Part shown: in pieces, positions 15,246-35,275 of the stretch
Layout: the number at the start of each line of letters is the position of its first letter
Position numbering within the stretch: the first letter of the stretch is position 1
Origin: Macrostomum lignano
Taxonomy: Eukaryota
Length of the DNA: 64,000 bases
Reading direction: 5' to 3'
Assembly: GCA_002269645.1 (NCBI GenBank)
Contig: NIVC01001454.1
Span: 58,842-122,841 of the forward strand
Notes under the pieces: model-generated
Database searches by the model: none
Seen by the model: the letters and a program-made list of their open reading frames with translations, nothing else
What the model was told of the DNA's origin: nothing
Made by a program: the position numbers and the translations under genes

Positions 15246-15786
15246 AAATTTTAGTGATAGTGTGCAGCAATAGTTTAAAATGATCCTTTTTGTTTTACAG
15301 AAAGAATTTTGTTTTACTGACGTAACTGGTATTTAAAGTATCTATGGATAAAATCATAAATACCTTGAATGAACAGAATCAAAGAGTTAACACGATAATA
15401 AAATACGGATGCAGTTGACCGGGTCACCGAAAAATTCGGTTTTATAATTCATAGCTTATTGACTGTGTAACGAAATGTGTAATAGAATGATAGAATGATA
15501 AAATAGATCCATAAATATTAGAGGACATGTACGTAGAAAATTAAAATACAATTACTAGAATCCTAATTTTACGAACAAAAAAATTTTATGAATATCAATA
15601 GTCAATAAATCGATTAGACAGGCGAGACATCAAAAGATCAACATTGGTTTACCTCCTATCAAAAGCATTAAACTATTTTTGTGCTGAAAAAATGAAAAAT
15701 GAAAGTGTTTTTTAGTAAAAAAATTCCTCCTAAAATTTTCCAATACATTCTAAACCTAGTCTACTTGAGTAGCTCTTGTAAGGCAA

Positions 15787-17330: not shown

Positions 17331-17363
17331 GCAGTGGTGCTGCTGGCGGTCCTTCAGGCTCCC

Positions 17364-19106
17364 TCAGTCCTGGACAAAGCGCAGCACCAGTGCTCCTTCA
17401 GGCTTGCTCTGCACCGTTGTCTGCCTTCGACACTGGCTCAGCTTTCGTCGTGGCAGGCTGCACAGTCCGGCGAACACTTTGCTGTAGATCGCCAGCATCT
17501 GCAGCTGCCGCGCCCGCATCAGGTAGTCGGTGTTGGGCGACACAACCGACAGTCGGTCAGACAGAAAAGCGATCAACACGTTGAAGAAGAACAGCACGAG
17601 AACAACCTGAATGAAGACGAGCGCAAGGCCGAGTCGTCTCAGAGAGTCGGCTAAGAAGCCCTCTCCGAGGATCACAGCTCGGTAGAATCCCAGCCAGAGA
17701 CCAGTCGGCATCACATTGAAAGATAGCTGGAAAATTGGCTCGCACGGAATCATTGCTGCGAACATCCAGGAGGCGTTGGCAAGCATCAGGCTGACCAGGA
17801 CGAACAGCCAGCAGAGCATGTCCATCAGGCACCACAATTGGAAGAACATCCGATCTAGCAGGCCAAGTTCGAAGAACACTGCAACCAGACCTAGCAGCAT
17901 GCCAATGAGGAACATGGCATCAAGCACACCCATCAGACTGTTGGGCAGTTGATGAAACTGACCGGTGCAAAACGTATTCGCTTGGATAGAGAGAGTAAAA
18001 GCAAAAGAAACTGGCCACAATGGAATCAATAGAGCTGGCGAGAACCATTTGAAATCGGACAGGAACGTCTGCAAGAGTCGGACAATCGTACTTTTGTTCG
18101 TTGATGCAGCAACTTTCAGGATGTGAAATCTGGCAACAACAATGGCTATTTTACGAATTGAGAAAACGGCACACAAAGTATAAACAAAAATTTCCAGCAC
18201 TGCAACTCCGCTGTCATTTTCCGAGTCACCGATGCTGTGTAACAGATCGTTAAACTCGCAGCTGGTATTGCATTCCGTCCCGGATTTCACTTTGCGGTAA
18301 AATGTTGGCGCAGCGATAATTCCGATACCGCACAGCAGCGCAATGCAAAACACGGCGTTTATCCACAGCAGCTTTTTGTTCCGCGACAGAGTCTCAGCCG
18401 ACCAGCACGCGATGACGTCGGAGTCCCAGAAGCGCTTCATCGAGTCGTCCAGCGGCTCCGCGTCCCGCGTCATGTCGGTCAGCATCGTCAGCGGACTCGT
18501 GTCCCGCCTGTCGCCCCTCGGGAAGCTGTACTCGCTGAGGTCCACACAGCGCAGTCTCACTGCTCCTGCATCAATCAGGCTGCTGCAGTACCTGCTGCTG
18601 CAGTGCAGAATCCAGTGAGCCACTGAGAACTGCCGCCTGTTCACTGCCAGCTCCAGCGCATTCAGTCCCAGCGCTTCCTTGTCCAGCAGCTGGCACAGCT
18701 GCTCAGAGACCTGCTCATCGCTGCTGTGCAACTGCTGCAGAAAGCTCACAGCCTGCTGTTGGAGAGACTCACAATTCACAATCCACAGCTTGACGATGAG
18801 GCAGTGGACTGGGCAGCAGTCAGCATCCTTCATCACTTGCTGGCTTGTCGTCTCGAGCAGGTAGCGGAAGCAGTCGGGAGCCAGGCTGCAGCAGCTCAGC
18901 TCGATGAGAGACGTGTGCTGCGACAGGAGCTGGGCGAATGCGGCTCCGTCAGCGGAGCACGGGATGAAGTCGTGGGCGGCGTGAGGGAAGCTGAGCCGGT
19001 CAGATGCAGAGTCCCTGCTGCTCAGCAGCCTCTTCAGCGATGCCAAATCGTCTTTTTTCAAGATTTTTGAAATCCTGGAGTCACTGGAACCGGACTCTGG
19101 CGCCAT
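17364..19106 (-). CDS. Intronless, divergent TRPV-like cation channel (580 aa)
   Basis: Ankyrin-like GLNALELAVNRRQFSVAHWIL; pre-S1 SPLTMLTD...W; about six hydrophobic segments; pore-like FYRAVILGEG; S6/TRP-helix-like VLFFFNVLIAFLSDRLSVVSPNTDYLMRARQLQML (cf. TRPV5/6 LLMLNLLIAMMGDT...RDELWRAQ). Confidence 0.8.
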   Translation of the reverse strand: MAPESGSSDSRISKILKKDDLASLKRLLSSRDSASDRLSFPHAAHDFIPCSADGAAFAQLLSQHTSLIELSCCSLAPDCFRYLLETTSQQVMKDADCCPVHCLIVKLWIVNCESLQQQAVSFLQQLHSSDEQVSEQLCQLLDKEALGLNALELAVNRRQFSVAHWILHCSSRYCSSLIDAGAVRLRCVDLSEYSFPRGDRRDTSPLTMLTDMTRDAEPLDDSMKRFWDSDVIACWSAETLSRNKKLLWINAVFCIALLCGIGIIAAPTFYRKVKSGTECNTSCEFNDLLHSIGDSENDSGVAVLEIFVYTLCAVFSIRKIAIVVARFHILKVAASTNKSTIVRLLQTFLSDFKWFSPALLIPLWPVSFAFTLSIQANTFCTGQFHQLPNSLMGVLDAMFLIGMLLGLVAVFFELGLLDRMFFQLWCLMDMLCWLFVLVSLMLANASWMFAAMIPCEPIFQLSFNVMPTGLWLGFYRAVILGEGFLADSLRRLGLALVFIQVVLVLFFFNVLIAFLSDRLSVVSPNTDYLMRARQLQMLAIYSKVFAGLCSLPRRKLSQCRRQTTVQSKPEGALVLRFVQD

Positions 19107-19649
19107 TGTCTCTGCTGATGGAGTTCCGTCGGGTCAAATAGGAGTGGAGTATAGCCGTGGATTGGTGACAGACTAGTGCAGCTTCATCAATAAATAAGAT
19201 GAGACACTGACTGACATCCGTAACTGTTAGACCTCAGTATTGATTTTGTCTCCCAATGTAAACGAAAAATTAACGCAGAATTGTTTGACTTATCATTACA
19301 GTTTTTAGTAGCCATGCAGGTTTTCTATTTGCTGTGCAAGCACACTGCAATTAAACAGCTTGATCTGATAATGTAAATTTTAGTATTTCAGTGTGTGATT
19401 GACAGTCAATTAAAACCTTATTTACCCAAGGTTTGCGAGCAAACAAATGCAGACAGCTCAGGCTGGATGACCATAAAATCATTAGCAAATTAATTTTACT
19501 CAGAATGCTGCTTTATTGGATTTATCAGTTTGTCACTACATTAATCTGTAATTAATCATTTAATCTGTCTATGGCCAGAATGCATCGAAACACTTGCGAA
19601 CTTACAACCGTGTATAAGAAAGGTATGAGAGAAAGACTACTGCTGATTA

Positions 19650-19940
19650 ATAATAAAAATAATTGATTACACCTGCCCCTATTGGGCCAGATGTGCAACC
19701 GACAGCTCAGCCGCAGCTATTGCGTGGTGCATCTGAAGGCTGCGTACGGCTGTTCAGTCCAAGGACTGGGGGGGGGGTCACCACACACCCTCAATTACCC
19801 CAGCTAATGCTGGTGCACATTTTACAGCTGGGTGAACTGAAGCAATGCAGAGTTAAGTGTCTTGCTTAAGGACACAAATTGTTCGGGAAAGGAACCACCG
19901 ACCTTCAAGACGTGAGTCCGACGCTCTAGCCACTGGGCTA
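19650..19940 (-). mobile_element. tRNA-derived CORE-type SINE
   Basis: Minus strand: A box TAGCCCAGTGG, disrupted B box, CORE-like GTGTCCTTAAGCAAGACACTTAAC and CCCAGCTGTAAAATG, A/T-rich tail. Confidence 0.75.
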
Positions 19941-20657
19941 CAACCCCTAGGTTACAGACTAGCCGATATAAATAGTCTATGGCCGAAGCTGTTGATCCTG
20001 TCTGACTTTAACGACTCGCCAGCAGCCATCGAAACCAGTCCATGGCTTTCACCCAAGAAAATGGACATTGCCATTGGAAGTATTGAGCTGGCAGATAGCG
20101 GATTAATTCTTATATTTGTTGCTAAGAAAGCTACACGATCTGACTTCTGATCTGAAGTTTCTTTCACAGATTTGACAAGATTTTGCGAAAAGTATTTCAA
20201 GTTGTCGCCTGATATATGGCGAACTTTTGGCCTGCCAATTTTTAAAACACGCACAGGTTTTGCCTCGCATGCTGAATGGTAAAAATATAATAGCAACGAA
20301 TAAGCTTGCTTCTGAAAAGTCACTGTGAAAATGGAATAATGTTTTAAATCATTCTGATAGTTTAAACTGCTTTATAGATTACCTTGAAAAATCACTATCT
20401 GTAAGGTAATCAACTATCCCTGTAACGAAAATTACACTAAAAAATTCATGAAATTTAAAGTACTTTTTAAGCGACTTCAAATTCAGCAAATGAGTGATTT
20501 CATCTCAACTAATTCAAAGCATAATATACTACTAAACTAATTTCAAACTTTATAGTAGTCAAATTAGCATTTTCGAGTACAATAATGACACGTGTAGACG
20601 CAGAAACGCGTACTGCACGGTTCAGAATATCAATTTGATGGGGAATCTGGGTCAGGC

Positions 20658-20697
20658 CCAATGACAGCTTTTTCCTCTGTGAAAGCTGCTATAAAAA
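20658..20697 (+). promoter_or_regulatory. CCAAT and TATA boxes of precursor gene A
   Basis: CCAAT at 20658-20662 and TATAAAAA at 20690-20697, ~90 bp upstream of the ATG; AATAAA at 21151, 21165 and 21175 downstream of the stop. Confidence 0.6.
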
Positions 20698-20782
20698 CTG
20701 CGGAGAACTGCATGTGCTCACAGCTAGAAATATAAACCTTAACCACTGACAAGAACTCCGCCGCATCGCCACAGAACATATC

Positions 20783-21070
20783 ATGCCTGTCTACTCACGA
20801 AAGACCGCCATTGTATCGCGCGTTGTCATGGTAGCGGCATTCATTAGTTGCCTGTTTGTCCTAATTGCAACAACACAAACGGCGGAAGCTGCCATTGTCC
20901 GAGCAACCGAAGACTCCTATGCCGACCTCTTGGACGCCGGCGCTGGAGGATTCGATTTGAGAAGCAAACGCGGTCCCGAACTTATGATGCTGCGCTTGAT
21001 GCAGTGCCGCTGGTACCGCAGTCACAACTGGGTTGCCCCTAAAGAAATGCACTGCTCTAAGCTTATCTAA
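20783..21070 (+). CDS. Secreted prepropeptide A (95 aa): signal, acidic pro-region, KR, 32-aa two-Cys mature peptide
   Basis: Hydrophobic VVMVAAFISCLFVLIA ending AEA; pro-region with EDSY; KR at residues 62-63; mature GPELMMLRLMQCRWYRSHNWVAPKEMHCSKLI; TATA box, poly(A) signals and a diverged paralogue at 35,015. Confidence 0.85.
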   Translation: MPVYSRKTAIVSRVVMVAAFISCLFVLIATTQTAEAAIVRATEDSYADLLDAGAGGFDLRSKRGPELMMLRLMQCRWYRSHNWVAPKEMHCSKLI

Positions 21071-21284
21071 CTGAATCTAATTGTGGAACTCATGGCTTGT
21101 GAAACCGATTCTAAAATCGTGCGTTAATTTCTGGCGATCTATGATTAGCAAATAAATCGAGAAAAATAAAAACTAATAAACCCGACATCAAATAGTTCAG
21201 AAAATAGTGAATTATAACTGAGAAATGTTTTTTGTGACTTTGTTTCTTATCATTCATATATTATATCTTAGCGAGTGGGTTCAC

Positions 21285-22200
21285 GAGTGATTTAATGAAT
21301 GAGTTCATTAGTGTTTTCATGAGTGAGTTCATGAGTGATTTAATGAATGAGTTCATGAGTGATTTAATGAATGGGTTCATGAGAGATTTAATGAATGGGT
21401 TCATGAGTGATTTCATGAGTGAGTTCATGAGTGATTTAATGAGTGACTTCATGAGTGATTTTATGAGTGAGTTCATGAGTGATTTAATGAATGAGTTCAT
21501 GAGTGATTTCATGAATGGGTTCATGAGAGATTTAATGAATGGGTTCATGAGTGATTTCATGAGTGAGTTCATGAGTGATTTAATGAGTGAGTTCATGAGT
21601 GAGTTCATGAGTGAGTTCATGAGAGATTTAATGAATGGGTTCATAAGTGATTTCATGAGTGAGTTCATGAGTGAGTTCATGAGAGATTTAATGAATGAGT
21701 TCATGAGAGATTTAATGAATGGGTTCATAAGTGATTTCATGAGTGAGTTCATGAGAGATTTAATGAATGAGTTCATAAGTGATTTAATGAATGAGTTCAT
21801 GAGTGATTTAATGAATGAGTTCATAAGTGGTTTAATGAATGAGTTCATGAGAGATTTAATGAATGGGTTCATAAGTGATTTCATGAGTGAGTTCATGAGT
21901 GAGTTCATGAGTGATTTAATGAGTGAGTTCATGAGTGAGTTCATGAGTGAGTTCATGAGTGATTTAATGAATGAGTTCATGAGAGATTTAATGAATGGGT
22001 TCATAAGTGATTTCATGAGTGAGTTCATGAGTGAGTTCATGAGTGAGTTCATGAGTGATTTAATGAGTGAGTTCATGAGTGAGTTCATGAGTGAGTTCAT
22101 GAGTGATTTAATGAATGAGTTCATGAGTGATTTAATGAGTGAGTTCATGAGTGAGTTGATAAGTGACTTAATGAATAAGTTCATGAATTAGTTTATGAGT
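21285..22200. repeat. 12-bp satellite (ATGAGTGAGTTC/ATGAGTGATTTA/ATGAATGRGTTC), copy 1
   Basis: Lies between the poly(A) signals of gene A and the promoter of gene B. Confidence 0.95.
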
Positions 22201-23069
22201 GAGTTGATTAGTGAGTGAGTTGATGAGTGATTTAATGAATGAGTGAGTGAGTGAGTGAGTCCATGAATGCGTTGATGACTGATTGAGTTCATGCGATAGA
22301 TAGATGCGATAGAACATGACACTAAAGCTGAGTGACTGCATGACTGGGCGCGATCGCGTGGGCGAGCACATGGTATTTAGGATGATTGCTAAAATGGAGA
22401 ATTAATTTTTCTGGGTCCTTTGAACTAGAATGGACTGACACAAGTGCATATGCGAGCCTACAAGTGCATAGAAACTGAAGCTTGGCGATGAGCAATGAAG
22501 CAAATATAACACGTGACAATTTTTCTGACACTTGAATGAAAGGTCAGGCATATGCGATTGCTGTCTCATCCAATTTTTTCTGTACCTGTCGTCAAACAGT
22601 TTGATCTTCAGTCAATCAATCAACTGCTCTGAAAATAGACCCTCGATCCTACAGTTTTATGATTATTAACAATTGATAACTTGTCAAAGCTGCGCTAGCG
22701 AAGTCTCTAGAATGACAGAAATGGACTTTTATAATGATGAAATGAAACCTCAGTTTAGCAGCGAAGCCTAAAGAATCGAAAAAGTACATTAAGTTTTTAA
22801 TTCAATCGCATACAAATGAGAGAGAGATAGAAGGACTAAACGACTGCTGCTGACTAGCCGATATGAATAGTCTATGGCCAAAGCTATTGATTCTGTCTGA
22901 CTTTACCGACTAGTCCATGGCTTTCACCCCAGAGCGGTACAGTGCCGCTCGATGGCTCCACTATTTAAGCGAGCATCCAAGAGCGCTAAAAAGACAAAAC
23001 CAACCAGTTAACTCCAAACACCTTTCATTATTCAACAAACAGACCGAGTATTACAGCATAGCAAGCATT

Positions 23070-23486
23070 ATGAAGTTCCAACTCGCATTGCCAATTGTCG
23101 CTCTGGTGCTAATCTCCACTGCTCTAATCTGCTCGGCTGCTTGGATACGGCCGCGCTCGGCTGCTGCATACGGGCCGCGCTCGGCTGCTCCGTTAAGGGG
23201 GCCGCGCTCGGCTGCTCCGTTAAGGGGGCCGCGCTCGGCTGCTGCATACGGGCCGCGCTCGGCTGCTCCGTTAAGGGGGCCGCGCTCGGCTGATATGGAC
23301 GACGATTCTGAGCCTGATAACAACGTCGACTTTATTGGCGGAATCAACGCTGCTCTGGATGCCGCAGGCCTCGATGCCGACATCCAGACGGACGGCCAGA
23401 AGATCGTCTTCAACGCTTACAACAAACCGGTGGCCACAATGGACATTGCCACGGGAAATATCGAGCCGGCAGATGACAGCGACTAG
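23070..23486 (+). CDS. Secreted precursor B (138 aa): signal, five PR/S repeats, acidic C-terminal domain
   Basis: ATG at 23070 (in frame with track ORF 22917); signal MKFQLALPIVALVLISTALICSA; SAAAYGPR x2 and SAAPLRGPR x3; 16 D/E in the last 66 aa; TATTTAA at 22962; AATAAA at ~23625 and ~23652. Confidence 0.85.
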   Translation: MKFQLALPIVALVLISTALICSAAWIRPRSAAAYGPRSAAPLRGPRSAAPLRGPRSAAAYGPRSAAPLRGPRSADMDDDSEPDNNVDFIGGINAALDAAGLDADIQTDGQKIVFNAYNKPVATMDIATGNIEPADDSD

Positions 23487-23901
23487 AGAAAAAGATTGGC
23501 GCTAGTCTGACTGATTTTGATGGGAGGCTGCGCTTTGAAATGCAGATATGCTGATTGATTTAATGGACGCTTCGACGCTGAGCTAATGTTACCAACAATA
23601 GCAATAACACTGATTAGCTAATTAATAAAGAAGCTTATCGCCCACTGCTTAAATAAAATATAACGTGTCAATTTACTTGATTGCTGATTCTGCATTGCTA
23701 TTTTATCCAGTTGATTCTCAGCCGTCAAATTGCAACTGATAGCTTTTTTAAGCTTGCCTGATCTTAATCAGAACTTGTATTATTAACTGGCAGATTCAAT
23801 TAGCACACTTTGAGGGAATGCTTAGAAGTCAATAGAATCTCTTTAAATTGTCTGCATGTTGCTACTGAAGACTGTATTAAGTAGTATAAATTAAGCGCTA
23901 A

Positions 23902-24496
<595 letters not shown>

Positions 24497-26377
24497 AAGG
24501 AGCTGAAATCCTCATACTGCATACAACTTCAACAGCAGTGCGTCACAAAGTAAGAAATTGAAGATGCGCTCGTCAAACCAGTTGATAAAGCTGCAGTAAA
24601 AGTTTAAGCCGATGCAAAACGATCAGCAGCTCGTATATGCGGCTCGCAGATCTTGTCAGCGAATTTTTTACATTTCTGACAGATTGCTCCAGTTTTGCAT
24701 TGGAAACAATTTTTCCCATTATATTGTTTATTCTTTTCACACGAAGAAGTTTCTAAGCCAGATTAGACATTGCATGCTCCAATGGATATTGAAATGCACA
24801 CCTACAAGTTGGAAAATTTGCGTGAACTGGTTTGCGTCACAGCACAGATCTCAGTATACACGAATTCCTTATACATTTACAATGTCCACGATTTAAACTG
24901 CTTCGATTTCCAGGATCATCGAATCATTTGATGGTCTTACTTTTTGAGCCCATCAAACAATTCGATGGTTCTGAAATTAAAGCACTTTAAACCATAGACT
25001 ACGCGGTCCTGGCTTAGAATGAGCCCAATAACTATCAATAAATAAGCAATCGGAATTTACGTAGCAAATATGACGAATGCAAATGCAGAAAGGTATAGTA
25101 GCATATTGGACCATATACAAGGTTATTTTAGAACGCGTGTTAAATGTTACGTAATCGTAGAATTGAATGACAACAGTAATAACAAGCTGCTTTAACAATG
25201 AATAAAAATTACGTTAAAAAGAAGACATGTCTTTGCATCTTGTTCTTGATGAGTTAGTTGGTGTGTCACTTCAAGTAGAAGTTGAAGGTGTACAGTTGTT
25301 TGTGCGCCCTGACCAGCTTCTGGCAACGCTTCTCTCAACTTGACTGAAAATCATCGAGCGGGACGAGAAACAGACATCGCATCAGATTCACAATACAATG
25401 CATGGACTTTTGGCTATAGCGGGCAGAGAAATGCGTTTCTGCCATCCACTGAGACCCACTGAGGGGACAGAAGAAAGGCGAATTTTGGTACACTTTTGGT
25501 ACTTTGGAATCTTCGTAAGTCCTTTGTTCATCCACTAATCCATAATCATTAGATATTTATAACCAACAACAAATTAACCAACAAACAACAACAAAGCGCC
25601 ATGACAATAGTGGGTTTTTTCTGTCATAGACATCTAAGCACTCAAAACCGACTATATTGAGCAGCATTATAATCACTATAGTCGTCTTAATCTTGTATGT
25701 AGCGCCAAAAATTCTTGATTGTAGAAACAGAAATTGTAGATATTTGGAATGTTAGATTCTAGTTTTCAAATTGTAGCAGTCTCCTCAAAACCAGTTTCCG
25801 TAATAGTCCATTGATCCTTAATGGACAATTAAGTATCGCTTTTTCACGATCTAAATAGGAATTTGGACAATCAAAACAGCAAAAAAGCCATTCAAAACGG
25901 GAATTCACCCAATTTAATGTACATGTATTCTTTATATCTCTGGGCCACTGGAATGGTTAAAAGTGAGCAAAGTGTCTGCAGTCTGCTTGCTATTGGAAGA
26001 AAAATAAAAGTAAATCCTGTCGCTGCAGGCACCTGCCAAGTGCCTCTGACAGCTCAGCTGCCGATGGGCCGCCTTCTCGGCGGTGACCACCTGATCCGCT
26101 CCAGCAGCATGAAGCGCCATTCCTCCTGTGTCACCCCTTACAGACGTAATCCTCTATGGGCTGCTTATTCCTCTTTGCGTCCAGTGCCGTCAGAGATAGC
26201 AGCCTGCGCAACTTTCGCTAAACGTCGTCTCAGAAGACACGATGGCAAAACGACTAAATGGTGCTGTTGAACGCATCGCTATCAACCAAATGCGCTATGA
26301 AACCTCCGAAAGAAAAGGACCTAGTTTACGTGATCTCGTACATCTAGGTGAAATCTTTTTCTGCACGCTTTCAATAT

Positions 26378-27574
26378 CTATCGAAAAAAAGAATTTGGGA
26401 TTATTCGCTTATTCATCCCGATTGGTTGTTGGATGAAAAACGTATTCGCCTGGATAGAGAGAGTAAAAGCAAAAGAAACTGGCCACAATGGAATCAATAG
26501 AGCTGGCGAGAACCATTTGAAATCGGACAGGAACGTCTGCAAGAGTCGGACAATCGTACTTTTGTTCGTTGATGCAGCAACTTTCAGGATGTGAAATCTG
26601 GCAACAACAATGGCTATTTTACGAATTGAGAAAACGGCACACAAAGTATAAACAAAAATTTCCAGCACTGCAACTCCGCTGTCATTTTCCGAGTCACCGA
26701 TGCTGTGTAACAGATCGTTAAACTCGCAGCTGGTATTGCATTCCGTCCCGGATTTCACTTTGCGGTAAAATGTTGGCGCAGCGATAATTCCGATACCGCA
26801 CAGCAGCGCAATGCAAAACACGGCGTTTATCCACAGCAGCTTTTTGTTCCGCGACAGAGTCTCAGCCGACCAGCACGCGATGACGTCGGAGTCCCAGAAG
26901 CGCTTCATCGAGTCGTCCAGCGGCTCCGCGTCCCGCGTCATGTCGGTCAGCATCGTCAGCGGACTCGTGTCCCGCCTGTCGCCCCTCGGGAAGCTGTACT
27001 CGCTGAGGTCCACACAGCGCAGTCTCACTGCTCCTGCATCAATCAGGCTGCTGCAGTACCTGCTGCTGCAGTGCAGAATCCAGTGAGCCACTGAGAACTG
27101 CCGCCTGTTCACTGCCAGCTCCAGCGCATTCAGTCCCAGCGCTTCCTTGTCCAGCAGCTGGCACAGCTGCTCAGAGACCTGCTCATCGCTGCTGTGCAAC
27201 TGCTGCAGAAAGCTCACAGCCTGCTGTTGGAGAGACTCACAATTCACAATCCACAGCTTGACGATGAGGCAGTGGACTGGGCAGCAGTCAGCATCCTTCA
27301 TCACTTGCTGGCTTGTCGTCTCGAGCAGGTAGCGGAAGCAGTCGGGAGCCAGGCTGCAGCAGCTCAGCTCGATGAGAGACGTGTGCTGCGACAGGAGCTG
27401 GGCGAATGCGGCTCCGTCAGCGGAGCACGGGATGAAGTCGTGGGCGGCGTGAGGGAAGCTGAGCCGGTCAGATGCAGAGTCCCTGCTGCTCAGCAGCCTC
27501 TTCAGCGATGCCAAATCGTCTTTTTTCAAGATTTTTGAAATCCTGGAGTCACTGGAACCGGACTCTGGCGCCAT
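26378..27574 (-). pseudogene. Truncated duplicate of the TRPV-like gene (398-aa ORF: 379 aa shared, 19 aa novel, no pore)
   Basis: Matches the 580-aa protein up to SIQANTF, then reads across the duplication junction into FIQQPIGMNKRIIPNSFFR*. Confidence 0.85.
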
Positions 27575-28117
27575 TGTCTCTGCTGATGGAGTTCCGTCGG
27601 GTCAAATAGGAGTGGAGTATAGCCGTGGATTGGTGACAGACTAGTGCAGCTTCATCAATAAATAAGATGAGACACTGACTGACATCCGTAACTGTTAGAC
27701 CTCAGTATTGATTTTGTCTCCCAATGTAAACGAAAAATTAACGCAGAATTGTTTGACTTATCATTACAGTTTTTAGTAGCCATGCAGGTTTTCTATTTGC
27801 TGTGCAAGCACACTGCAATTAAACAGCTTGATCTGATAATGTAAATTTTAGTATTTCAGTGTGTGATTGACAGTCAATTAAAACCTTATTTACCCAAGGT
27901 TTGCGAGCAAACAAATGCAGACAGCTCAGGCTGGATGACCATAAAATCATTAGCAAATTAATTTTACTCAGAATGCTGCTTTATTGGATTTATCAGTTTG
28001 TCACTACATTAATCTGTAATTAATCATTTAATCTGTCTATGGCCAGAATGCATCGAAACACTTGCGAACTTACAACCGTGTATAAGAAAGGTATGAGAGA
28101 AAGACTACTGCTGATTA

Positions 28118-28419
28118 ATAATAAAAATAATTGATTACACCTGCCCCTATTGGGCCAGATGTGCAACCGACAGCTCAGCCGCAGCTATTGCGTGGTGCAT
28201 CTGAAGGCTGCGTACGGCTGTTCAGTCCAAGGACTGGGGGGGGGTCACCACACACCCTCAATTACCCCAGCTAATGCTGGTGCACATTTTACAGCTGGGT
28301 GAACTGAAGCAATGCAGAGTTAAGTGTCTTGCTTAAGGACACAAACTGTTCCGAGTTGGGATCGAGAAAGGAACCCCCGACCTTCAAGACGTAAGTCCGA
28401 CGCTCTAGCCACTGGGCTA
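28118..28419 (-). mobile_element. CORE-type SINE, duplicated copy
   Basis: Same element as 19,650-19,940, with a longer, interrupted B box (GGTTC-CTTTCT-CGATCCC). Confidence 0.75.
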
Positions 28420-29270
28420 AAACCCCTGGGTTACAGACTAGCCGATATTAATAGTCTATGGCCAAAGCTGTTGATCCTGTCTGACTTTAACGACTCGCCA
28501 GCAGCCATCGAAACCAGTCCATGGCTTTCACCCAAGAAAATGGACATTGCCATTGGAAGTATTGAGCTGGCAGATAGCGGATTTTTACTTAATATTTCTT
28601 GTTGCTAAGAAAGCTACACGATCTGACTTTTGATCTGAAGTTTCTTTCACAGATTTGACAAGATTTTGCGAAAAGTATTTCAAGTTGTCGCCTGATATAA
28701 CTTTTGGCGAACTTTTGGTCTGCCAATTTTTAAAACAAGCACAGGTTTTGCCTCGCATGCTGAATGGTAAAAATATAATAGCAACGAATAAGCTTGCTTC
28801 TGAAAAGTCACTGTGAAAATGGAATAATGTTTTAAATCATTCTGATAGTTTAAACTGCTTTATAGATTACCTTGAAAAATCACTATCTGTAAGGTAATCA
28901 ACTATCCCTGTAACGAAAATTACACTCGAAAATTCATGAAATTTAAAGTACTTTTTAAGCGACTTCAAATTCAGCAAATGAGTGATTTCATCTCAACTAA
29001 TTCAAAGCATAATATACTACTAAACTAATTTCAAACTTTATAGTAGTCAAATTAGCATTTTCGAGTACAATAATGACACGTGTAGACGCAGAAACGCGTA
29101 CTGCACGGTTCAGAATATTAATTTGATGGGGAATCTGGGTCAGGCCCAATGACAGCTTTTTCCTCTGTGAAAGCTGCTATAAAAACTGCGGAGAACTGCA
29201 TGTGCTCACAGTTAGAAATATAAACCTTAACCACTGACAAGAACTCCGCCGCATCGCCACAGAACATATC

Positions 29271-29558
29271 ATGCCTGTCTACTCACGAAAGACCGCCATT
29301 GTATCGCGCGTTGTCATGGTAGCGGCATTCATTAGTTGCCTGTTTGTCCTAATTGCAACAACACAAACGGCGGAAGCTGCCATTGTCCGAGCAACCGAAG
29401 ACTCCTATGCCGACCTCTTGGACGCCGGCGCTGGAGGATTCGATTTGAGAAGCAAACGCGGTCCCGAACTTATGATGCTGCGCTTGATGCAGTGCCGCTG
29501 GTACCGCAGTCACAACTGGGTTGCCCCTAAAGAAATGCACTGCTCTAAGCTTATCTAA
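29271..29558 (+). CDS. Secreted prepropeptide A, second copy (identical protein)
   Basis: Same 95-aa translation as 20783-21070. Confidence 0.85.
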   Translation: MPVYSRKTAIVSRVVMVAAFISCLFVLIATTQTAEAAIVRATEDSYADLLDAGAGGFDLRSKRGPELMMLRLMQCRWYRSHNWVAPKEMHCSKLI

Positions 29559-29772
29559 CTGAATCTAATTGTGGAACTCATGGCTTGTGAAACCGATTCT
29601 AAAATCGTGCGTTAATTTCTGGCGATCTATGATTAGCAAATAAATCGAGAAAAATAAAAACTAATAAACCCGACATCAAATAGTTCAGAAAATAGTGAAT
29701 TATAACTGAGAAATGTTTTTTGTGACTTTGTTTCTTATCATTCATATATTATATCTTAGCGAGTGGGTTCAC

Positions 29773-30796
29773 GAGTGATTTAATGAATGAGTTCATTAGT
29801 GTTTTCATGAGTGAGTTCATGAGTGATTTAATGAATGAGTTCATGAGTGATTTAATGAATGGGTTCATGAGAGATTTAATGAATGGGTTCATGAGTGATT
29901 TCATGAGTGAGTTCATGAGTGATTTAATGAGTGACTTCATGAGTGATTTTATGAGTGAGTTCATGAGTGATTTAATGAATGAGTTCATGAGTGATTTCAT
30001 GAATGGGTTCATGAGAGATTTAATGAATGGGTTCATGAGTGATTTCATGAGTGAGTTCATGAGTGATTTAATGAGTGAGTTCATGAGTGAGTTCATGAGT
30101 GAGTTCATGAGTGATTTAATGAATGAGTTCATGAGAGATTTAATGAATGGGTTCATAAGTGATTTCATGAGTGAGTTCATGAGTGAGTTCATGAGAGATT
30201 TAATGAATGGGTTCATAAGTGATTTCATGAGTGAGTTCATGAGTGAGTTCATGAGAGATTTATTGAATGAGTTCATGAGTGATTTAATGAATGGGTTCAT
30301 AAGTGATTTCATGAGTGAGTTCATGAGTGAGTTCATGAGAGATTTAATGAATGAGTTCATGAGAGATTTAATGAATGGGTTCATAAGTGATTTCATGAGT
30401 GAGTTCATGAGAGATTTAATGAATGAGTTCATAAGTGATTTAATGAATGAGTTCATGAGTGATTTAATGAATGAGTTCATAAGTGGTTTAATGAATGAGT
30501 TCATGAGAGATTTAATGAATGGGTTCATAAGTGATTTCATGAGTGAGTTCATGAGTGAGTTCATGAGTGATTTAATGAGTGAGTTCATGAGTGAGTTCAT
30601 GAGTGAGTTCATGAGTGATTTAATGAATGAGTTCATGAGAGATTTAATGAATGGGTTCATAAGTGATTTCATGAGTGAGTTCATGAGTGAGTTCATGAGT
30701 GATTTAATGAATGAGTTCATGAGTGATTTAATGAGTGAGTTCATGAGTGAGTTGATAAGTGACTTAATGAATAAGTTCATGAATTAGTTTATGAGT
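29773..30796. repeat. 12-bp satellite, copy 2 (~108 bp longer than copy 1)
   Basis: Track ORF lengths are 334 versus 298 aa, a difference of nine 12-bp units. Confidence 0.95.
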
Positions 30797-31665
30797 GAGT
30801 TGATTAGTGAGTGAGTTGATGAGTGATTTAATGAATGAGTGAGTGAGTGAGTGAGTCCATGAATGCGTTGATGACTGATTGAGTTCATGCGATAGATAGA
30901 TGCGATAGAACATGACACTAAAGCTGAGTGACTGCATGACTGGGCGCGATCGCGTGGGCGAGCACATGGTATTTAGGATGATTGCTAAAATGGAGAATTA
31001 ATTTTTCTGGGTCCTTTGAACTAGAATGGACTGACACAAGTGCATATGCGAGCCTACAAGTGCATAGAAACTGAAGCTTGGCGATGAGCAATGAAGCAAA
31101 TATAACACGTGACAATTTTTCTGACACTTGAATGAAAGGTCAGGCATATGCGATTGCTGTCTCATCCAATTTTTTCTGTACCTGTCGTCAAACAGTTTGA
31201 TCTTCAGTCAATCAATCAACTGCTCTGAAAATAGACCCTCGATCCTACAGTTTTATGATTATTAACAATTGATAACTTGTCAAAGCTGCGCTAGCGAAGT
31301 CTCTAGAATGACAGAAATGGACTTTTATAATGATGAAATGAAACCTCAGTTTAGCAGCGAAGCCTAAAGAATCGAAAAAGTACATTAAGTTTTTAATTCA
31401 ATCGCATACAAATGAGAGAGAGATAGAAGGACTAAACGACTGCTGCTGACTAGCCGATATGAATAGTCTATGGCCAAAGCTATTGATTCTGTCTGACTTT
31501 ACCGACTAGTCCATGGCTTTCACCCCAGAGCGGTACAGTGCCGCTCGATGGCTCCACTATTTAAGCGAGCATCCAAGAGCGCTAAAAAGACAAAACCAAC
31601 CAGTTAACTCCAAACACCTTTCATTATTCAACAAACAGACCGAGTATTACAGCATAGCAAGCATT

Positions 31666-32082
31666 ATGAAGTTCCAACTCGCATTGCCAATTGTCGCTCT
31701 GGTGCTAATCTCCACTGCTCTAATCTGCTCGGCTGCTTGGATACGGCCGCGCTCGGCTGCTGCATACGGGCCGCGCTCGGCTGCTCCGTTAAGGGGGCCG
31801 CGCTCGGCTGCTCCGTTAAGGGGGCCGCGCTCGGCTGCTGCATACGGGCCGCGCTCGGCTGCTCCGTTAAGGGGGCCGCGCTCGGCTGATATGGACGACG
31901 ATTCTGAGCCTGATAACAACGTCGACTTTATTGGCGGAATCAACGCTGCTCTGGATGCCGCAGGCCTCGATGCCGACATCCAGACGGACGGCCAGAAGAT
32001 CGTCTTCAACGCTTACAACAAACCGGTGGCCACAATGGACATTGCCACGGGAAATATCGAGCCGGCAGATGACAGCGACTAG
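31666..32082 (+). CDS. Secreted precursor B, second copy (identical protein)
   Basis: Same 138-aa translation as 23070-23486. Confidence 0.85.
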   Translation: MKFQLALPIVALVLISTALICSAAWIRPRSAAAYGPRSAAPLRGPRSAAPLRGPRSAAAYGPRSAAPLRGPRSADMDDDSEPDNNVDFIGGINAALDAAGLDADIQTDGQKIVFNAYNKPVATMDIATGNIEPADDSD

Positions 32083-32498
32083 AGAAAAAGATTGGCGCTA
32101 GTCTGACTGATTTTGATGGGAGGCTGCGCTTTGAAATGCAGATATGCTGATTGATTTAATGGACGCTTCGACGCTGAGCTAATGTTACCAACAATAGCAA
32201 TAACACTGATTAGCTAATTAATAAAGAAGCTTATCGCCCACTGCTTAAATAAAATATAACGTGTCAATTTACTTGATTGCTGATTCTGCATTGCTATTTT
32301 ATCCAGTTGATTCTCAGCCGTCAAATTGCAACTGATAGCTTTTTTAAGCTTGCCTGATCTTAATCAGAACTTGTATTATTAACTGGCAGATTCAATTAGC
32401 ACACTTTGAGGGAATGCTTAGAAGTCAATAGAATCTCTTTAAATTGTCTGCATGTTGCTACTGAAGACTGTATTAAGTAGTATAAATTAAGCGCTAAA

Positions 32499-32979
<481 letters not shown>

Positions 32980-35014
32980 AAGGAGCTGAAATCCTCATAC
33001 TGCATACAACTTCAACAGCAGTGCGTCACAAAGTAAGAAATTGAAGATGCGCTCGTCAAACCAGTTGATAAAGCTGCAGTAAAAGTTTAAGCCGATGCAA
33101 AACGATCAGCAGCTCGTATATGCGGCTCGCAGATCTTGTCAGCGAATTTTTTACATTTCTGACAGATTGCTCCAGTTTTGCATTGGAAACAATTTTTCCC
33201 ATTATATTGTTTATTCTTTTCACACGAAGAAGTTTCTAAGCCAGATTAGACATTGCATGCTCCAATGGATATTGAAATGCACACCTACAAGTTGGAAAAT
33301 TTGCGTGAACTGGTTTGCGTCACAGCACAGATCTCAGTATACACGAATTCCTTATACATTTACAATGTCCACGATTTAAACTGCTTCGATTTCCAGGATC
33401 ATCGAATCATTTGATGGTCTTACTTTTTGAGCCCATCAAACAATTCGATGGTTCTGAAATTAAAGCACTTTAAACCATAGACTACGCGGTCCTGGCTTAG
33501 AATGAGCCCAATAACTATCAATAAATAAGCAATCGGAATTTACGTAGCAAATATGACGAATGCAAATGCAGAAAGGTATAGTAGCATATTGGACCATATA
33601 CAAGGTTATTTTAGAACGCGTGTTAAATGTTACGTAATCGTAGAATTGAATGACAACAGTAATAACAAGCTGCTTTAACAATGAATAAAAATTACGTTAA
33701 AAAGAAGACATGTCTTTGCATCTTGTTCTTGATGAGTTAGTTGGTGTGTCACTTCAAGTAGAAGTTGAAGGTGTACAGTTGTTTGTGCGCCCTGGCCAGC
33801 TTCTGGCAACGCTTCTCTCAACTTGACTGAAAATCATCGAGCGGGACGAGAAACAGACATCGCATCAGATTCACAATACAATGCATGGACTTTTGGCTAT
33901 AGCGGGCAGAGAAATGCGTTTCTGCCATCCACTGAGACCCACTGAGGGGACAGAAGAAAGGCGAATTTTGGTACACTTTTGGTACTTTGGAATCTTCGTA
34001 AGTCCTTTGTTCATCCACTAATCCATAATCATTAGATATTTATAACCAACAACAAATTAACCAACAAACAACAACAAAGCGCCATGACAATAGTGGGTTT
34101 TTTCTGTCATAGACATCTAAGCACTCAAAACCGACTATATTGAGCAGCATTATAATCACTATAGTCGTCTTAATCTTGTATGTAGCGCCAAAAATTCTTG
34201 ATTGTAGAAACAGAAATTGTAGATATTTGGAATGTTAGATTCTAGTTTTCAAATTGTAGCAGTCTCCTCAAAACCAGTTTCCGTAATAGTCCATTGATCC
34301 TTAATGGACAATTAAGTATCGCTTTTTCACGATCTAAATAGGAATTTGGACAATCAAAACAGCAAAAAAGCCATTCAAAACGGGAATTCACCCAATTTAA
34401 TGTACATGTATTCTTTATATCTCTGGGCCACTGGAATGGTTAAAAGTGAGCAAAGTGTCTGCAGTCTGCTTGCTATTGGAAGAAAAATAAAAGTAAATCC
34501 TGTCGCTGCAGGCACCTGCCAAGTGCCTCTGACAGCTCAGCTGCCGATGGGCCGCCTTCTCGGCGGTGACCACCTGATCCGCTCCAGCAGCATGAAGCGC
34601 CATTCCTCCTGTGTCACCCCTTACAGACGTAATCCTCTATGGGCTGCTTATTCCTCTTTGCGTCCAGTGCCGTCAGAGATAGCAGCCTGCGCAACTTTCG
34701 CTAAACGTCGTCTCAGAAGACACGATGGCAAAACGACTAAATGGTGCTGTTGAACGCATCGCTATTAACCAAATGCGCTATGAAAGAAAAGGACCTAGTT
34801 TACGTGATCTCGTACATCTAGGTGAAATCTTTTTCTGCACGCTTTCAATATCTATCGAAAAAAAGTATTTGGGATTATTCGCTTATTCATCCCGATTGGT
34901 TGTTGGATGAAAAAAATTAGTTGGGGTGTATTGAGCATTTCAGCCACTATATACAAAGGCAAAATACGAGTATCTAGATTTCATTTCTCCTCTTAATTTT
35001 CCACGAGAAGACAA

Positions 35015-35275
35015 ATGGCAACAATTATGGCGAAAAGCAACGCGATCGATTCGAAATTTCTCCTACTAGCATCGGCCATCGTACTCTGCTGCGGTGCGAT
35101 CCCCAACCAAGGGCCTAGTGAGGACAGCTACTCAAACTACGTAGAAGAGTCTGTGGATTTTCAGGCGCCGGCTAAACGCGGACCGGAGAACATGTTAATG
35201 CGCAAGTTTATCTGCGATTACTACAGGCATCACAACTGGAAACCGCCTGCCTATCTGAAGTGTCACCAAATGTGA
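35015..35275 (+). CDS. Secreted prepropeptide C (86 aa), paralogue of A
   Basis: Signal KFLLLASAIVLCCGA; pro-region with EDSY; KR at residues 54-55; mature GPENMLMRKFICDYYRHHNWKPPAYLKCHQM is 13/31 identical to A with both Cys aligned; TATACAAA at ~34,949; AATAAA at 35,357. Confidence 0.85.
   Translation: MATIMAKSNAIDSKFLLLASAIVLCCGAIPNQGPSEDSYSNYVEESVDFQAPAKRGPENMLMRKFICDYYRHHNWKPPAYLKCHQM

What the first reader, a model, noticed from the sequence alone, without database searches (positions are those of the whole stretch)
23070..23486. Charge-bipartite precursor B with six PR|S sites: a possible polyprotein of short Pro/Arg peptides
Seen: after a clear signal peptide comes WIRPR, then SAAAYGPR, SAAPLRGPR, SAAPLRGPR, SAAAYGPR, SAAPLRGPR (10 Arg, no acidic residue), built from 24- and 27-bp DNA units in the order A-B-B-A-B. 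A 66-aa tail follows with 16 D/E and 2 K, containing a short beta-hairpin-like stretch (IQTDGQKIVFNAYNKPVATMDIATGNIE). There are no dibasic sites. Established: Pro at P2, Arg at P1 and a small residue at P1' is the preference of thrombin-like serine proteases, and Pro/Arg-rich antimicrobial peptides such as apidaecins are released from repetitive precursors. Inference: cleavage at PR|S would release two 8-mers and three 9-mers kept latent by the acidic tail. Alternatively the protein is an uncleaved polyampholyte (adhesive, mucus or plug component) or a protease bait.
Basis: partly seen in the sequence, partly recalled or inferred. Interest (0 to 1): 0.7.

Follow-up and report, generated by a model that had tools for sequence, protein, structure and literature searches.

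The report
Orphan secreted repeat protein, flatworm
This is a real, transcribed gene found only in the flatworm Macrostomum lignano; it encodes a small secreted protein with a young arginine-rich repeat and an acidic tail predicted to fold, and whether it is cut into short peptides is plausible but unproven.

Summary
Window 23070-23486 (+) encodes a 138-aa protein: a signal peptide, six ...PR|SAA units (24/27 bp, 10 Arg, no acidic residue), then a 66-aa tail with 16 D/E and 2 K.

- The window is Macrostomum lignano DNA. The gene is an RNA-seq-derived NCBI model (hypothetical protein). An identical second copy lies at 31666-32082 in an 8.5-kb tandem duplication.
- The six sites are one site copied by a very young in-frame minisatellite: the units are 100% identical, and near-identical genomic copies carry 5 or 7 units.
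- The tail is not just counter-charge. AlphaFold2 predicts, with pLDDT 92-95, a helix plus a four-stranded beta-meander. It has no significant match in sequence or fold databases.
- The gene sits between two paralogous prohormone-like genes (signal, acidic spacer, KR, 32-aa two-Cys peptide). In another contig it is fused in frame to one of them.

Cleavage at PR|S is chemically plausible. Three of the six sites are RGPR|S, which fits the minimal RXXR convertase motif, and "proline-directed arginyl cleavage" is an established process. It is untested here. The apidaecin-like antimicrobial reading is weak. Function is unresolved and interest is moderate.

The parts
22959..23069 (+). Annotated 5' part of the transcript (NCBI model is 5'-partial, starting at HYLSEHP); contains a TATA-like TATTTAA at 22962-22968
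   Evidence: P0002 model = 22959-23486. There is no ATG between 22959 and 23070. TATA-like motif found. Whether it is the promoter is unclear, because it lies inside the annotated transcript.
23070..23141 (+). Signal peptide, residues 1-24 (n-region MK, uncharged hydrophobic core F3-I20, c-region C-S-A-A; cut predicted after SAA or CSA)
   Evidence: Sequence. Hydropathy 2.4-2.8 over residues 4-20. AF2 helix 6-25. Heuristic only, because no SignalP was available.
23133..23285 (+). Arg-rich tandem repeat array: six in-frame units (24, 24, 27, 27, 24, 27 bp) = SAAWIRPR, SAAAYGPR, SAAPLRGPR x2, SAAAYGPR, SAAPLRGPR; six PR|S junctions, three of them RGPR|S (RXXR)
   Evidence: 74% GC against about 50-55% in the rest of the ORF. 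Predicted disordered, pLDDT below about 55. Copy number is 5 here and 7 in L001/L002.
23286..23327 (+). Acidic linker SADMDDDSEPDNNV (residues 73-86); its last codon is the breakpoint of the B-C fusion seen in L001
   Evidence: pLDDT about 60-75.
23328..23468 (+). Predicted folded acidic mini-domain, residues 87-133: helix 88-98 and strands 103-107, 111-116, 119-125, 131-133
   Evidence: AF2 single-sequence models: full protein pLDDT about 89-91 here; tail alone mean pLDDT 83.7, pTM 0.63, core 92-95, all five models 80-84. No significant fold or sequence relative.
23469..23486 (+). Acidic C-terminal end ADDSD plus stop codon
23624..23657 (+). Two AATAAA polyadenylation-type hexamers (23624, 23652)
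31666..32082 (+). Second, identical copy of gene B (B')
   Evidence: No difference from copy 1 across 22370-23980. Annotated in NCBI.
20783..21070 (+). Neighbour gene A (95 aa): signal, acidic spacer, KR, then 32-aa basic two-Cys peptide; second copy A' at 29271-29558
35015..35275 (+). Neighbour gene C (86 aa), a paralogue of A (32% identity; KRGPE.M..R...C..YR.HNW..P....C conserved)
17966..34914 (.). Two tandem copies of an approximately 8.5-kb segmental duplication (17966-26440 and 26434-34914), each carrying A, a 12-bp minisatellite, B and a (CTGC)n array
   Evidence: Self-BLAST, 96-98.6% identity.

Best explanation
Gene B is a genuine, transcribed, single-exon gene restricted to Macrostomum, and it encodes a small secreted modular protein. 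It has three parts: (1) a cleavable signal peptide; (2) an intrinsically disordered, purely cationic segment created by recent in-frame expansion of a GC-rich 24/27-bp minisatellite, still variable at 5 or 7 units; (3) after a 14-residue acidic linker, an acidic domain of about 47 residues that folds into a helix packed on a four-stranded beta-meander. It belongs to a tandemly duplicated cluster of small secretory genes, and its two neighbours have textbook prohormone architecture.

Most likely mechanism (inferred, not shown): B travels the regulated or secretory pathway as a charge-balanced pro-protein. It is cut C-terminal to Arg at the exposed Pro-Arg|Ser junctions. The most probable sites are the three RGPR|S (RXXR) sites, recognised by a furin/PC-type convertase, with the last one at R72|S73. 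That cut separates the folded acidic C-terminal domain (66 aa, about 7 kDa) from short Arg-containing peptides. The stable, information-bearing product is more likely the folded tail than the 8- or 9-mers.

Shown: sequence anatomy, annotation from RNA-seq, repeat dynamics, cluster context, predicted disorder and fold, absence of homologues. Inferred: secretion, cleavage, and which fragment is active.
For: Gene reality and expression:
- NCBI models BOX15_Mlig028992g1 and Mlig026277g1, plus the window's own models.
- The Mlig_3_7 annotation is built only from RNA-seq and transcripts (PMC5730564).
- The annotated frame has the best codon usage of six for the signal and tail; AATAAA lies downstream.
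- 0 substitutions in the 414-nt ORF between the window and L002, against about 8 in 700 bp upstream and 3 in the 3' UTR.

Secretion: canonical n/h/c signal-peptide layout.

Repeat as a young minisatellite: 78-bp superunit 100% identical; units identical at the DNA level; 5 versus 7 units in copies that are about 99% identical; 74% GC.

Disorder of the repeats and a folded tail.

Cleavability:
- Six PR|S sites, three of them RXXR, in a segment predicted to be disordered and therefore exposed.
- Established knowledge: Schwartz 1986, 'proline-directed arginyl cleavage' (citation seen). From my own knowledge, proBNP RAPR|S is cut by furin, proANP PR|S by corin, and Gly-Pro-Arg is the classic substrate sequence for thrombin and trypsin-like proteases.

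Context: the flanking paralogues A and C have signal, acidic spacer, KR and a basic Cys-loop peptide. An in-frame B-C fusion places B's N-terminal module in front of C's KR-peptide.
Against: - No peptide, protein or tissue-expression data exist for this gene in anything I could search.
- There are no dibasic sites, no Gly-basic amidation signals and no spacers, so it lacks the usual hallmarks of a flatworm neuropeptide precursor.
- Pro at P2 and a non-basic P2 make RGPR a weak furin site.
- No orthologues were available, so there is no evidence of selection on the sites, the peptides or the tail.
- The AF2 models are single-sequence. Their confidence may partly reflect a generic WD40/beta-meander sequence grammar.
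- Clustering with A and C does not prove co-expression.
Confidence: 0.4

Rival explanations
1. One reading: a polyprotein whose active products are the short Pro/Arg peptides (2 x SAAAYGPR, 3 x SAAPLRGPR, plus WIRPR). They would be released at every PR|S by a thrombin- or trypsin-like protease and kept latent by the acidic tail. They would act as antimicrobial or signalling peptides.
For: - Six identical PR|SAA junctions in a disordered segment.
- GPR|S is an ideal trypsin- or thrombin-type site (established knowledge).
- The charge-bipartite layout resembles the anionic propiece plus cationic peptide logic of many host-defence precursors.
- The neighbours A and C also pair an acidic spacer with a cationic peptide.
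Against: - The peptides are 8-9 aa with net charge about +0.5 and +1.5 and have 1-2 Pro. That is far from known Pro/Arg antimicrobial peptides, which are 16 aa or longer, rich in PRP motifs and strongly cationic (own knowledge).
- There is no amidation or pyroGlu signal.
- Copy number reflects minisatellite expansion only days to generations old in evolutionary terms, not selected multiplicity.
- The tail is predicted to be folded, which is unnecessary for a mere counter-ion.
Confidence: 0.15
2. An uncleaved secreted diblock polyampholyte. The cationic disordered block and the acidic block stay in one chain and act through charge. Possible roles are self-coacervation for dense packing in gland granules, or a component of mucus, rhabdites, eggshell/cement, seminal fluid or adhesive secretion.
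For: - Strong charge segregation: +10 against about -14 here, and +14 against -14 (net about 0) in the 7-unit allele.
- Disordered repeats.
- A repeat-number polymorphism is tolerated.
- M. lignano secretions are known to work through charge interactions (PMC6410801).
- Many gland-specific M. lignano transcripts are orphans (own knowledge of the literature listed).
Against: - At 114 residues, the mature protein is very small for a structural or adhesive protein.
- It has no Cys, DOPA-type Tyr richness, glycosylation sequons or known interaction domains.
- The exposed RXXR and PR|S sites would have to escape convertases in the secretory pathway.
Confidence: 0.25
3. A young, effectively neutral gene. 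It would be transcribed, but its product would have no selected function, or the repeat part would be a tolerated minisatellite insertion into a small orphan ORF.
For: - No homologue among 5.8 billion and 1.84 billion proteins apart from copies from the same genome.
- The window is saturated with minisatellites that create long spurious ORFs.
- Codon usage of the repeat is atypical.
- Structural variants (duplication, in-frame fusion, 5 or 7 units) coexist in one inbred line.
Against: - It has a complete signal peptide, the best-of-six codon usage in the non-repeat parts, and only in-frame (24/27 bp) units.
- A confidently predicted compact fold is unusual for random sequence.
- There are zero substitutions in the ORF against about 1% in the flanks, although this evidence is weak.
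- It is annotated from RNA-seq in every copy.
Confidence: 0.15

Closest known systems
Monobasic Pro-Arg prohormone processing sites ('proline-directed arginyl cleavage', Schwartz 1986; proANP ...PR|S cut by corin; proBNP RAPR|S cut by furin/corin)
   Same: Arg at P1, Pro at P2 and Ser at P1' in a secreted precursor. Three sites are R-G-P-R|S, with the same spacing as proBNP's R-A-P-R|S.
   Different: There is no sequence homology. The site is tandemly repeated. No processing data exist. Which flatworm enzyme might do this is unknown.
Multi-copy Pro/Arg antimicrobial peptide precursors (apidaecin type)
   Same: A secreted precursor with head-to-tail repeated units that contain Pro and Arg.
   Different: Apidaecin units are about 18 aa, contain PRP-type motifs and are flanked by dibasic sites and dipeptidyl spacers. 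Here the units are 8-9 aa with 1-2 Arg, and there are no spacers, no dibasic sites and no homology.
Charge-bipartite host-defence or hormone precursors (anionic propiece plus cationic mature peptide), including the window's own genes A and C
   Same: A signal peptide followed by oppositely charged halves. Same gene cluster, same strand, single exon, TATA-like motif and AATAAA.
   Different: In B the order is reversed, with the cationic half first. There is no KR site and no Cys. The acidic half is predicted to fold. B shows no detectable sequence similarity to A or C beyond shuffled controls.
Single blade of a WD40 beta-propeller, or one subdomain of a bulb-type (B_lectin, beta-prism II) lectin
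   Same: IQTDGQKIVFNAYNKPVATMDIATGN follows the local pattern xDGxxIVxxxxxKxVxxxDIxTG of a WD40 blade and resembles QxDGNxVxF...NxP of bulb lectins. The predicted structure is a four-stranded antiparallel meander.
   Different: There is only one unit. Each aligned stretch scores 15 bits or less. The Pfam WD40 and B_lectin models give no hit even at E <= 10. The hits span unrelated families: WD40, B_lectin, FN3 and autotransporter repeats. Resemblance is therefore one of beta-hairpin grammar, not membership.
Charge-based temporary adhesion/release system of M. lignano (Mlig-ap1 Lys/Arg repeats; postulated small anionic releasing factor)
   Same: Same organism. Cationic repeats and a small, strongly anionic secreted moiety are the kinds of players that model needs (PMC6410801).
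   Different: There is no expression link to adhesive organs. Releasing vesicles were reported to be poor in protein and positive for polysaccharide. This is only a lead.

Membership tests
Pro/Arg-rich antimicrobial peptide precursors (apidaecin type) | Mature units of at least about 16 aa, more than 25% Pro, PRP/PxP motifs, strongly cationic | tested here: not met
   Units are 8-9 aa with 12-22% Pro, no PRP motif and net charge about +0.5 and +1.5.
Pro/Arg-rich antimicrobial peptide precursors (apidaecin type) | Dibasic processing sites and dipeptidyl (EAEP-type) spacers between units | tested here: not met
   No [KR][KR] anywhere. Units abut directly.
Pro/Arg-rich antimicrobial peptide precursors (apidaecin type) | Detectable sequence homology | tested here: not met
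   The only hits are copies from the M. lignano genome itself. No Pfam family.
Proprotein-convertase substrates | R-X-X-R or R-X-K/R-R motif in an exposed segment of a secretory protein | tested here: met
   RGPR|S at residues 43-46, 52-55 and 69-72, in a segment with pLDDT below 55. This is the minimal motif only; P2 is Pro.
Proprotein-convertase substrates | Demonstrated cleavage | not testable with these tools
   Needs mass spectrometry or in vitro digestion.
Flatworm/bilaterian neuropeptide precursors | Signal peptide | tested here: met
   Heuristic n/h/c analysis. No SignalP was available.
Flatworm/bilaterian neuropeptide precursors | Repeated peptides flanked by KR/RR/R, with a C-terminal Gly for amidation | tested here: not met
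   No dibasic site. Gly is followed by Pro-Arg, so it is not an amidation signal.
Flatworm/bilaterian neuropeptide precursors | Conservation of the peptide across species and neuronal expression | not testable with these tools
   No orthologue in the searchable databases. No expression data found.
WD40 repeat / beta-propeller | Match to the WD40 profile and at least 4 tandem blades | tested here: not met
   Pfam gives nothing at E <= 10. There is a single unit. Matches to WD40 proteins are 4-12 bits per stretch.
Bulb-type mannose-binding lectin (B_lectin) | Match to the B_lectin profile; three subdomains with QxDxNxVxY | tested here: not met
   Pfam gives nothing at E <= 10. There is one degenerate motif, QTDGQKIVF (N to Q, V to I, Y to F). 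PDB agglutinin 1jpc scores E = 1.5.
Gene family of the neighbours A and C | Sequence similarity to A/C (EDSY spacer, KRGPE...C...YR.HNW..P....C) | tested here: not met
   Smith-Waterman scores are no better than shuffles. tblastn finds no cross-hit. B shares only location, strand and gene layout with A and C.

The most novel reading that the evidence does not exclude
B would be a self-masked, two-part secretion reagent. The cationic repeat block neutralises the anionic domain and packages it by intramolecular or coacervate charge pairing; the 7-unit allele is exactly charge-neutral. PR|S cleavage at exocytosis would unmask the small, folded, strongly anionic domain. That domain could be the still-unidentified anionic 'releasing factor' of the duo-gland adhesive organs. 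Alternatively, it could be a single-blade unit that oligomerises into a propeller- or lectin-like ring. In either case minisatellite copy number would tune the charge stoichiometry.
Probability: 0.04. Interest if true: 0.75.

Novelty: new variant of a known kind. Interest (0 to 1): 0.35.

Why it matters
If the processing model holds, B would be a compact example of a lineage-specific secretory pro-protein. Its cleavable cationic part is being built in real time by an in-frame minisatellite, next to two orphan prohormone-like genes, in a flatworm where transgenesis, RNAi and in situ hybridisation are routine. That makes three questions directly testable:
- how new secreted peptide genes arise;
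- how repeat number is tolerated;
- whether Pro-Arg monobasic processing operates in basal flatworms.

The predicted mini-fold of about 47 residues, with no known relative, is also a cheap target for structure determination.

If B is uncleaved or neutral, it is simply one more orphan repeat protein in a repeat-rich genome.

Tried and rejected
- Word-indexed homology search with the full protein found only three M. lignano copies. With the tail alone it found nothing. With an A+C profile it found only themselves.
- Exhaustive HMMER search of the tail against 1.84 billion representatives gave 25 non-self hits with E < 1e-3. All are long multi-repeat proteins (WD40, B_lectin, FN3, autotransporter PATR) whose many 4-15-bit stretches add up. 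I rejected these as homology.
- Pfam for B, the tail, A and C: nothing, even at E <= 10 for the tail. PDB sequence search: nothing significant.
- Foldseek of both AF2 models against PDB and BFVD: best E-values 0.28 (tail model, PDB), 0.31 (full-length model, PDB) and 0.06 (tail model, BFVD); top-ranked matches have TM about 0.45 or less, highest in the lists 0.54; mixed folds. Rejected.
- B tail, mature B and B signal peptide against A and C by Smith-Waterman with 2000 shuffles: no similarity. B is therefore not a diverged paralogue of its neighbours.
- Literature: full-text search for the gene ids and the peptide strings gave 0 papers. Supplement searches gave no mention in Weber 2018, Grudniewska 2018, the 2026 ploidy paper or Wudarski 2017; for the 2023 sex-limited evolution paper no supplementary files were held as text, so nothing could be searched.
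- Exact-product look-ups of the 138-aa and 189-aa ORFs in ENA/JGI/Logan contigs: none.
- The 78-nt 'intron' in NCBI model Mlig026277g1 is not a GT-AG intron. It is a gap of one A-B-B superunit in transcript-to-genome mapping, so I do not count the implied '4-unit' form as a reliable allele.
- The upstream in-frame ATG at 22917 (189-aa ORF) is rejected as the start. It lies outside the annotated transcript and would bury the signal peptide.
Full report
**Observation.** Window 23070-23486 (+) is an ORF of 138 codons plus stop. It encodes MKFQLALPIVALVLISTALICSAA, then WIRPR, then SAAAYGPR, SAAPLRGPR, SAAPLRGPR, SAAAYGPR, SAAPLRGPR, then a 66-residue tail SADMDDD...PADDSD. Residues 25-72 hold 10 Arg and no acidic residue (pI 12). 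Residues 73-138 hold 14 Asp, 2 Glu and 2 Lys (pI 4.05). There are six Pro-Arg pairs followed by Ser, no dibasic pair and no N-glycosylation sequon.

At the DNA level the array starts at 23133 and consists of units of 24, 24, 27, 27, 24 and 27 bp. The first unit (SAAWIRPR) is a diverged copy whose SAA doubles as the c-region of the signal peptide. All A units are identical to each other and all B units are identical to each other. Tandem Repeats Finder reports a 78-bp A-B-B superunit at 100% identity, score 288.

**Source and reality of the gene.** The protein matches two NCBI entries from Macrostomum lignano, BOX15_Mlig028992g1 and BOX15_Mlig026277g1, both 'hypothetical protein'. A third entry is the window's own model. 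The window comes from contig NIVC01001454.1 of assembly GCA_002269645.1. Five small genes are annotated there on the + strand: A, B, A', B' and C. According to its authors, that annotation was built only from RNA-seq (StringTie/TACO), a de novo transcriptome mapped with BLAT, and TransDecoder (PMC5730564). A model therefore implies transcription.

The model is 5'-partial and starts at 22959. The only ATG between that point and the ORF is 23070, with A at -3, so the 138-aa reading is the natural one. The 189-aa ORF from 22917 lies outside the transcript and would bury the signal peptide. Codon usage trained on four long coding stretches of the window ranks the annotated frame best of six for the signal and for the tail of B, and also for A and C. 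The repeat part is atypical, at 74% GC against 50-55%. AATAAA occurs 138 and 166 nt after the stop. The signal peptide has the canonical layout: n-region MK, an uncharged hydrophobic core of about 18 residues, then C-S-A-A. This is a heuristic call; no SignalP was available.

**The repeats are one site copied recently.** The window holds two copies of an approximately 8.5-kb tandem duplication, 17966-26440 and 26434-34914, at 96-98.6% identity. The two B genes and their flanks are identical across 22370-23980.

Two other contigs of the same highly redundant assembly carry the locus; the authors report 180 Mb in blocks that are at least 95% identical. L002 has A, B and C, with seven units after WIRPR (A-B-B-A-B-B-B). 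L001 has the same seven units. Between the window and L002 the ORF differs only by the 54-bp repeat indel. About 8 differences lie in the 700 bp upstream and 3 in the 3' UTR. This is weak evidence of constraint and strong evidence that repeat number changes faster than point substitutions.

The 'six PR|S sites' are therefore not six independent observations. The independent evidence amounts to three unit types (WIRPR, AYGPR, PLRGPR) that share the junction PR|SAA. All units are multiples of 3 bp, as expected if only in-frame changes survive. With seven units the mature protein carries +14 against about -14. With five units it carries +10 against -14.

**The tail.** AlphaFold2 goes further, even without an alignment:
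- In the full-length model the repeats are disordered (pLDDT about 46-57), but residues 91-130 reach 89-91.
- The tail alone gives mean pLDDT 83.7 and pTM 0.63, with 92-95 over its core, and all five models score 80-84.
- The predicted elements are a helix (88-98) and strands 103-107, 111-116, 119-125 and 131-133.

The tail is therefore predicted to be a compact acidic mini-domain of about 47 residues, preceded by a 14-residue acidic linker. It is not simply a floppy counter-ion.

Nothing known matches it:
- Pfam gives nothing, even at E <= 10.
- PDB sequence search gives nothing below E = 0.1.
- Foldseek against PDB and BFVD gives E >= 0.06; the top-ranked matches have TM about 0.45 or less (highest in the lists 0.54), and the folds are mixed.
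- An exhaustive HMMER scan of 1.84 billion representatives returned 25 non-self hits with E < 1e-3. They are WD40, bulb-lectin, FN3 and autotransporter-repeat proteins in which many stretches of 4-15 bits add up.

What those hits share with the tail is the local grammar xDGxxIVxxxxxKPVxxxDIxTG. This is typical of a WD40 blade or of one bulb-lectin subdomain. It is a description of a four-stranded meander, not evidence of family membership. It may also be part of the reason AF2 is so confident.

**Context.** A (20783-21070, duplicated at 29271-29558) and C (35015-35275) are paralogues with 32% identity. They share an EDSY motif in an acidic spacer, then KR, then a 32-residue basic peptide GPE.M..R...C..YR.HNW..P....C. 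This is textbook prohormone or host-defence precursor architecture. They too have no homologue in 5.8 billion proteins or in the PDB.

B shows no similarity to A or C beyond shuffled controls. A crude scan for signal-peptide ORFs finds no other plausible small secretory gene in the window.

In L001 a 5.2-kb deletion with CAxCGT microhomology joins B's codon 86 in frame to C's codon 24. The result is signal, repeats, acidic linker, then C's spacer, KR and peptide. NCBI annotates this as Mlig026277g1. Its 78-nt 'intron' is exactly one A-B-B superunit and cannot be a GT-AG intron in that register. It is therefore a mapping gap from a transcript with fewer units. I do not treat the implied 4-unit form as secure, because short-read assemblies collapse repeats.

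**Mechanism.** The following is shown:
- a transcribed gene for a protein with a secretory signal;
- a disordered cationic repeat block;
- a predicted folded acidic domain;
- rapid in-frame copy-number change;
- membership of a small secretory gene cluster.

The following is inferred. The protein is a pro-protein cut after Arg at the exposed Pro-Arg|Ser junctions. The established basis is:
- monobasic 'proline-directed arginyl cleavage' of peptide precursors (Schwartz 1986; the reference was verified);
- from my own knowledge, proANP ...PR|S cut by corin, proBNP RAPR|S cut by furin/corin, and Gly-Pro-Arg as the classical substrate sequence for thrombin and trypsin-like enzymes.

Three of the six sites are R-G-P-R|S, the minimal RXXR convertase motif. 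If only those three are used, the products are:
- (A)WIRPRSAAAYGPRSAAPLRGPR;
- SAAPLRGPR;
- SAAAYGPRSAAPLRGPR;
- the 66-aa acidic fragment starting at S73.

I think the folded tail is the more likely functional product, with the repeats serving as a cleavable, charge-balancing segment. I put about 0.4 on this overall picture.

**Rivals.**
The peptides are too short and too weakly charged for Pro/Arg antimicrobial peptides. They carry no amidation signal, and their multiplicity is too young to indicate selection.
- An uncleaved diblock polyampholyte acting in a gland secretion gets about 0.25. The charge segregation is striking, and M. lignano adhesion and release are known to depend on charge (PMC6410801). 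However, the protein is very small and lacks every feature of known adhesive or structural proteins.
- A transcribed but functionless young gene gets about 0.15.

**Comparison with known systems and novelty.** B works most like a prohormone with Pro-Arg monobasic sites. It resembles repetitive antimicrobial-peptide precursors only superficially. It fails the testable membership criteria of the apidaecin type, of classical neuropeptide precursors (no dibasic or amidation signals), and of the WD40, B_lectin and A/C families. It meets only the generic criteria of a signal peptide and an exposed RXXR motif.

It is already in GenBank as a hypothetical protein. I found no paper that mentions it. I rate it a new variant of a known kind, namely a lineage-restricted secretory repeat pro-protein, of moderate interest.

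The most novel reading not excluded is that the unmasked acidic domain is the unidentified anionic releasing factor of the duo-gland adhesive organ, or a self-assembling single-blade unit. This is unlikely: releasing vesicles were reported to be protein-poor, and no expression link exists.

**What would settle it.**
- In situ hybridisation or a reporter line for cell type.
- Trypsin-free peptidomics and top-down MS for the predicted fragments.
- In vitro convertase digestion.
- Biophysics of residues 73-138.
- RNAi with adhesion, mating and egg-laying read-outs.

Noticed in passing
window 20783-21070, 29271-29558, 35015-35275 (+): Genes A, A' and C are orphan paralogous prohormone-like ORFs: signal peptide, acidic spacer with EDSY, KR, then a conserved 32-aa basic peptide with two Cys 15 residues apart (GPE.M..R...C..YR.HNW..P....C). 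No homologue was found in 5.8 billion proteins, Pfam or the PDB. They may be a more promising bioactive-peptide lead than B itself.
   Followed up: partly
L001 10112-10615 (NIVC01002271.1), compared with L002 10423-15626: An in-frame B-C fusion gene created by a 5.2-kb deletion with CAxCGT microhomology. B's signal, repeats and acidic linker are joined to C from codon 24 onward. It is annotated by NCBI as Mlig026277g1 with a 78-nt pseudo-intron equal to one A-B-B repeat superunit. Whether it is a real haplotype or an assembly artefact was not resolved.
   Followed up: partly
window 17966-26440 and 26434-34914: The tandem segmental duplication starts inside the 580-aa multi-pass membrane protein gene (17364-19106, minus strand). 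The second copy (26378-27574) is therefore a truncated 5' fragment of 398 codons that runs into junction sequence. Neither has a Pfam match.
   Followed up: partly
window 23133-23285 compared with L002 10175-10381: Charge bookkeeping: the 7-unit allele gives +14 (Arg) against -14 (16 D/E minus 2 K), a net-neutral mature protein. The 5-unit allele in the window gives +10 against -14. This may be coincidence.
   Followed up: no
window 6976-11367 (+): A Ty3/gypsy-type LTR retrotransposon remnant. ORFs with gag/zinc knuckle, aspartic protease, RT, RNase H and integrase domains are spread over several broken frames.
   Followed up: partly
window 21116-22300 and 29750-30890; 23900-24520 and 32400-33000; 15786-17336; 36177-38120; 44943-46470; 61432-62427: Very long minisatellite and microsatellite arrays (12-bp, 4-bp, 31-bp, 23-bp units and others). 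They generate spurious ORFs of 150-340 codons on both strands, for example the MNSLIKSL and ACLPACLP 'proteins'.
   Followed up: no
window 59746-60396 and 62684-63100 (+): Two exons of a cullin-family gene (Pfam Cullin, E = 7e-46 and 2e-51). The second ORF runs on into a (CTGT/CTGC)n array.
   Followed up: no
window 41117-43732 (-): An 871-codon ORF for a large multi-pass membrane protein. Its only Pfam hit is sub-threshold (Band_3_cyto, 22.6 bits against a cut-off of 34.3).
   Followed up: no
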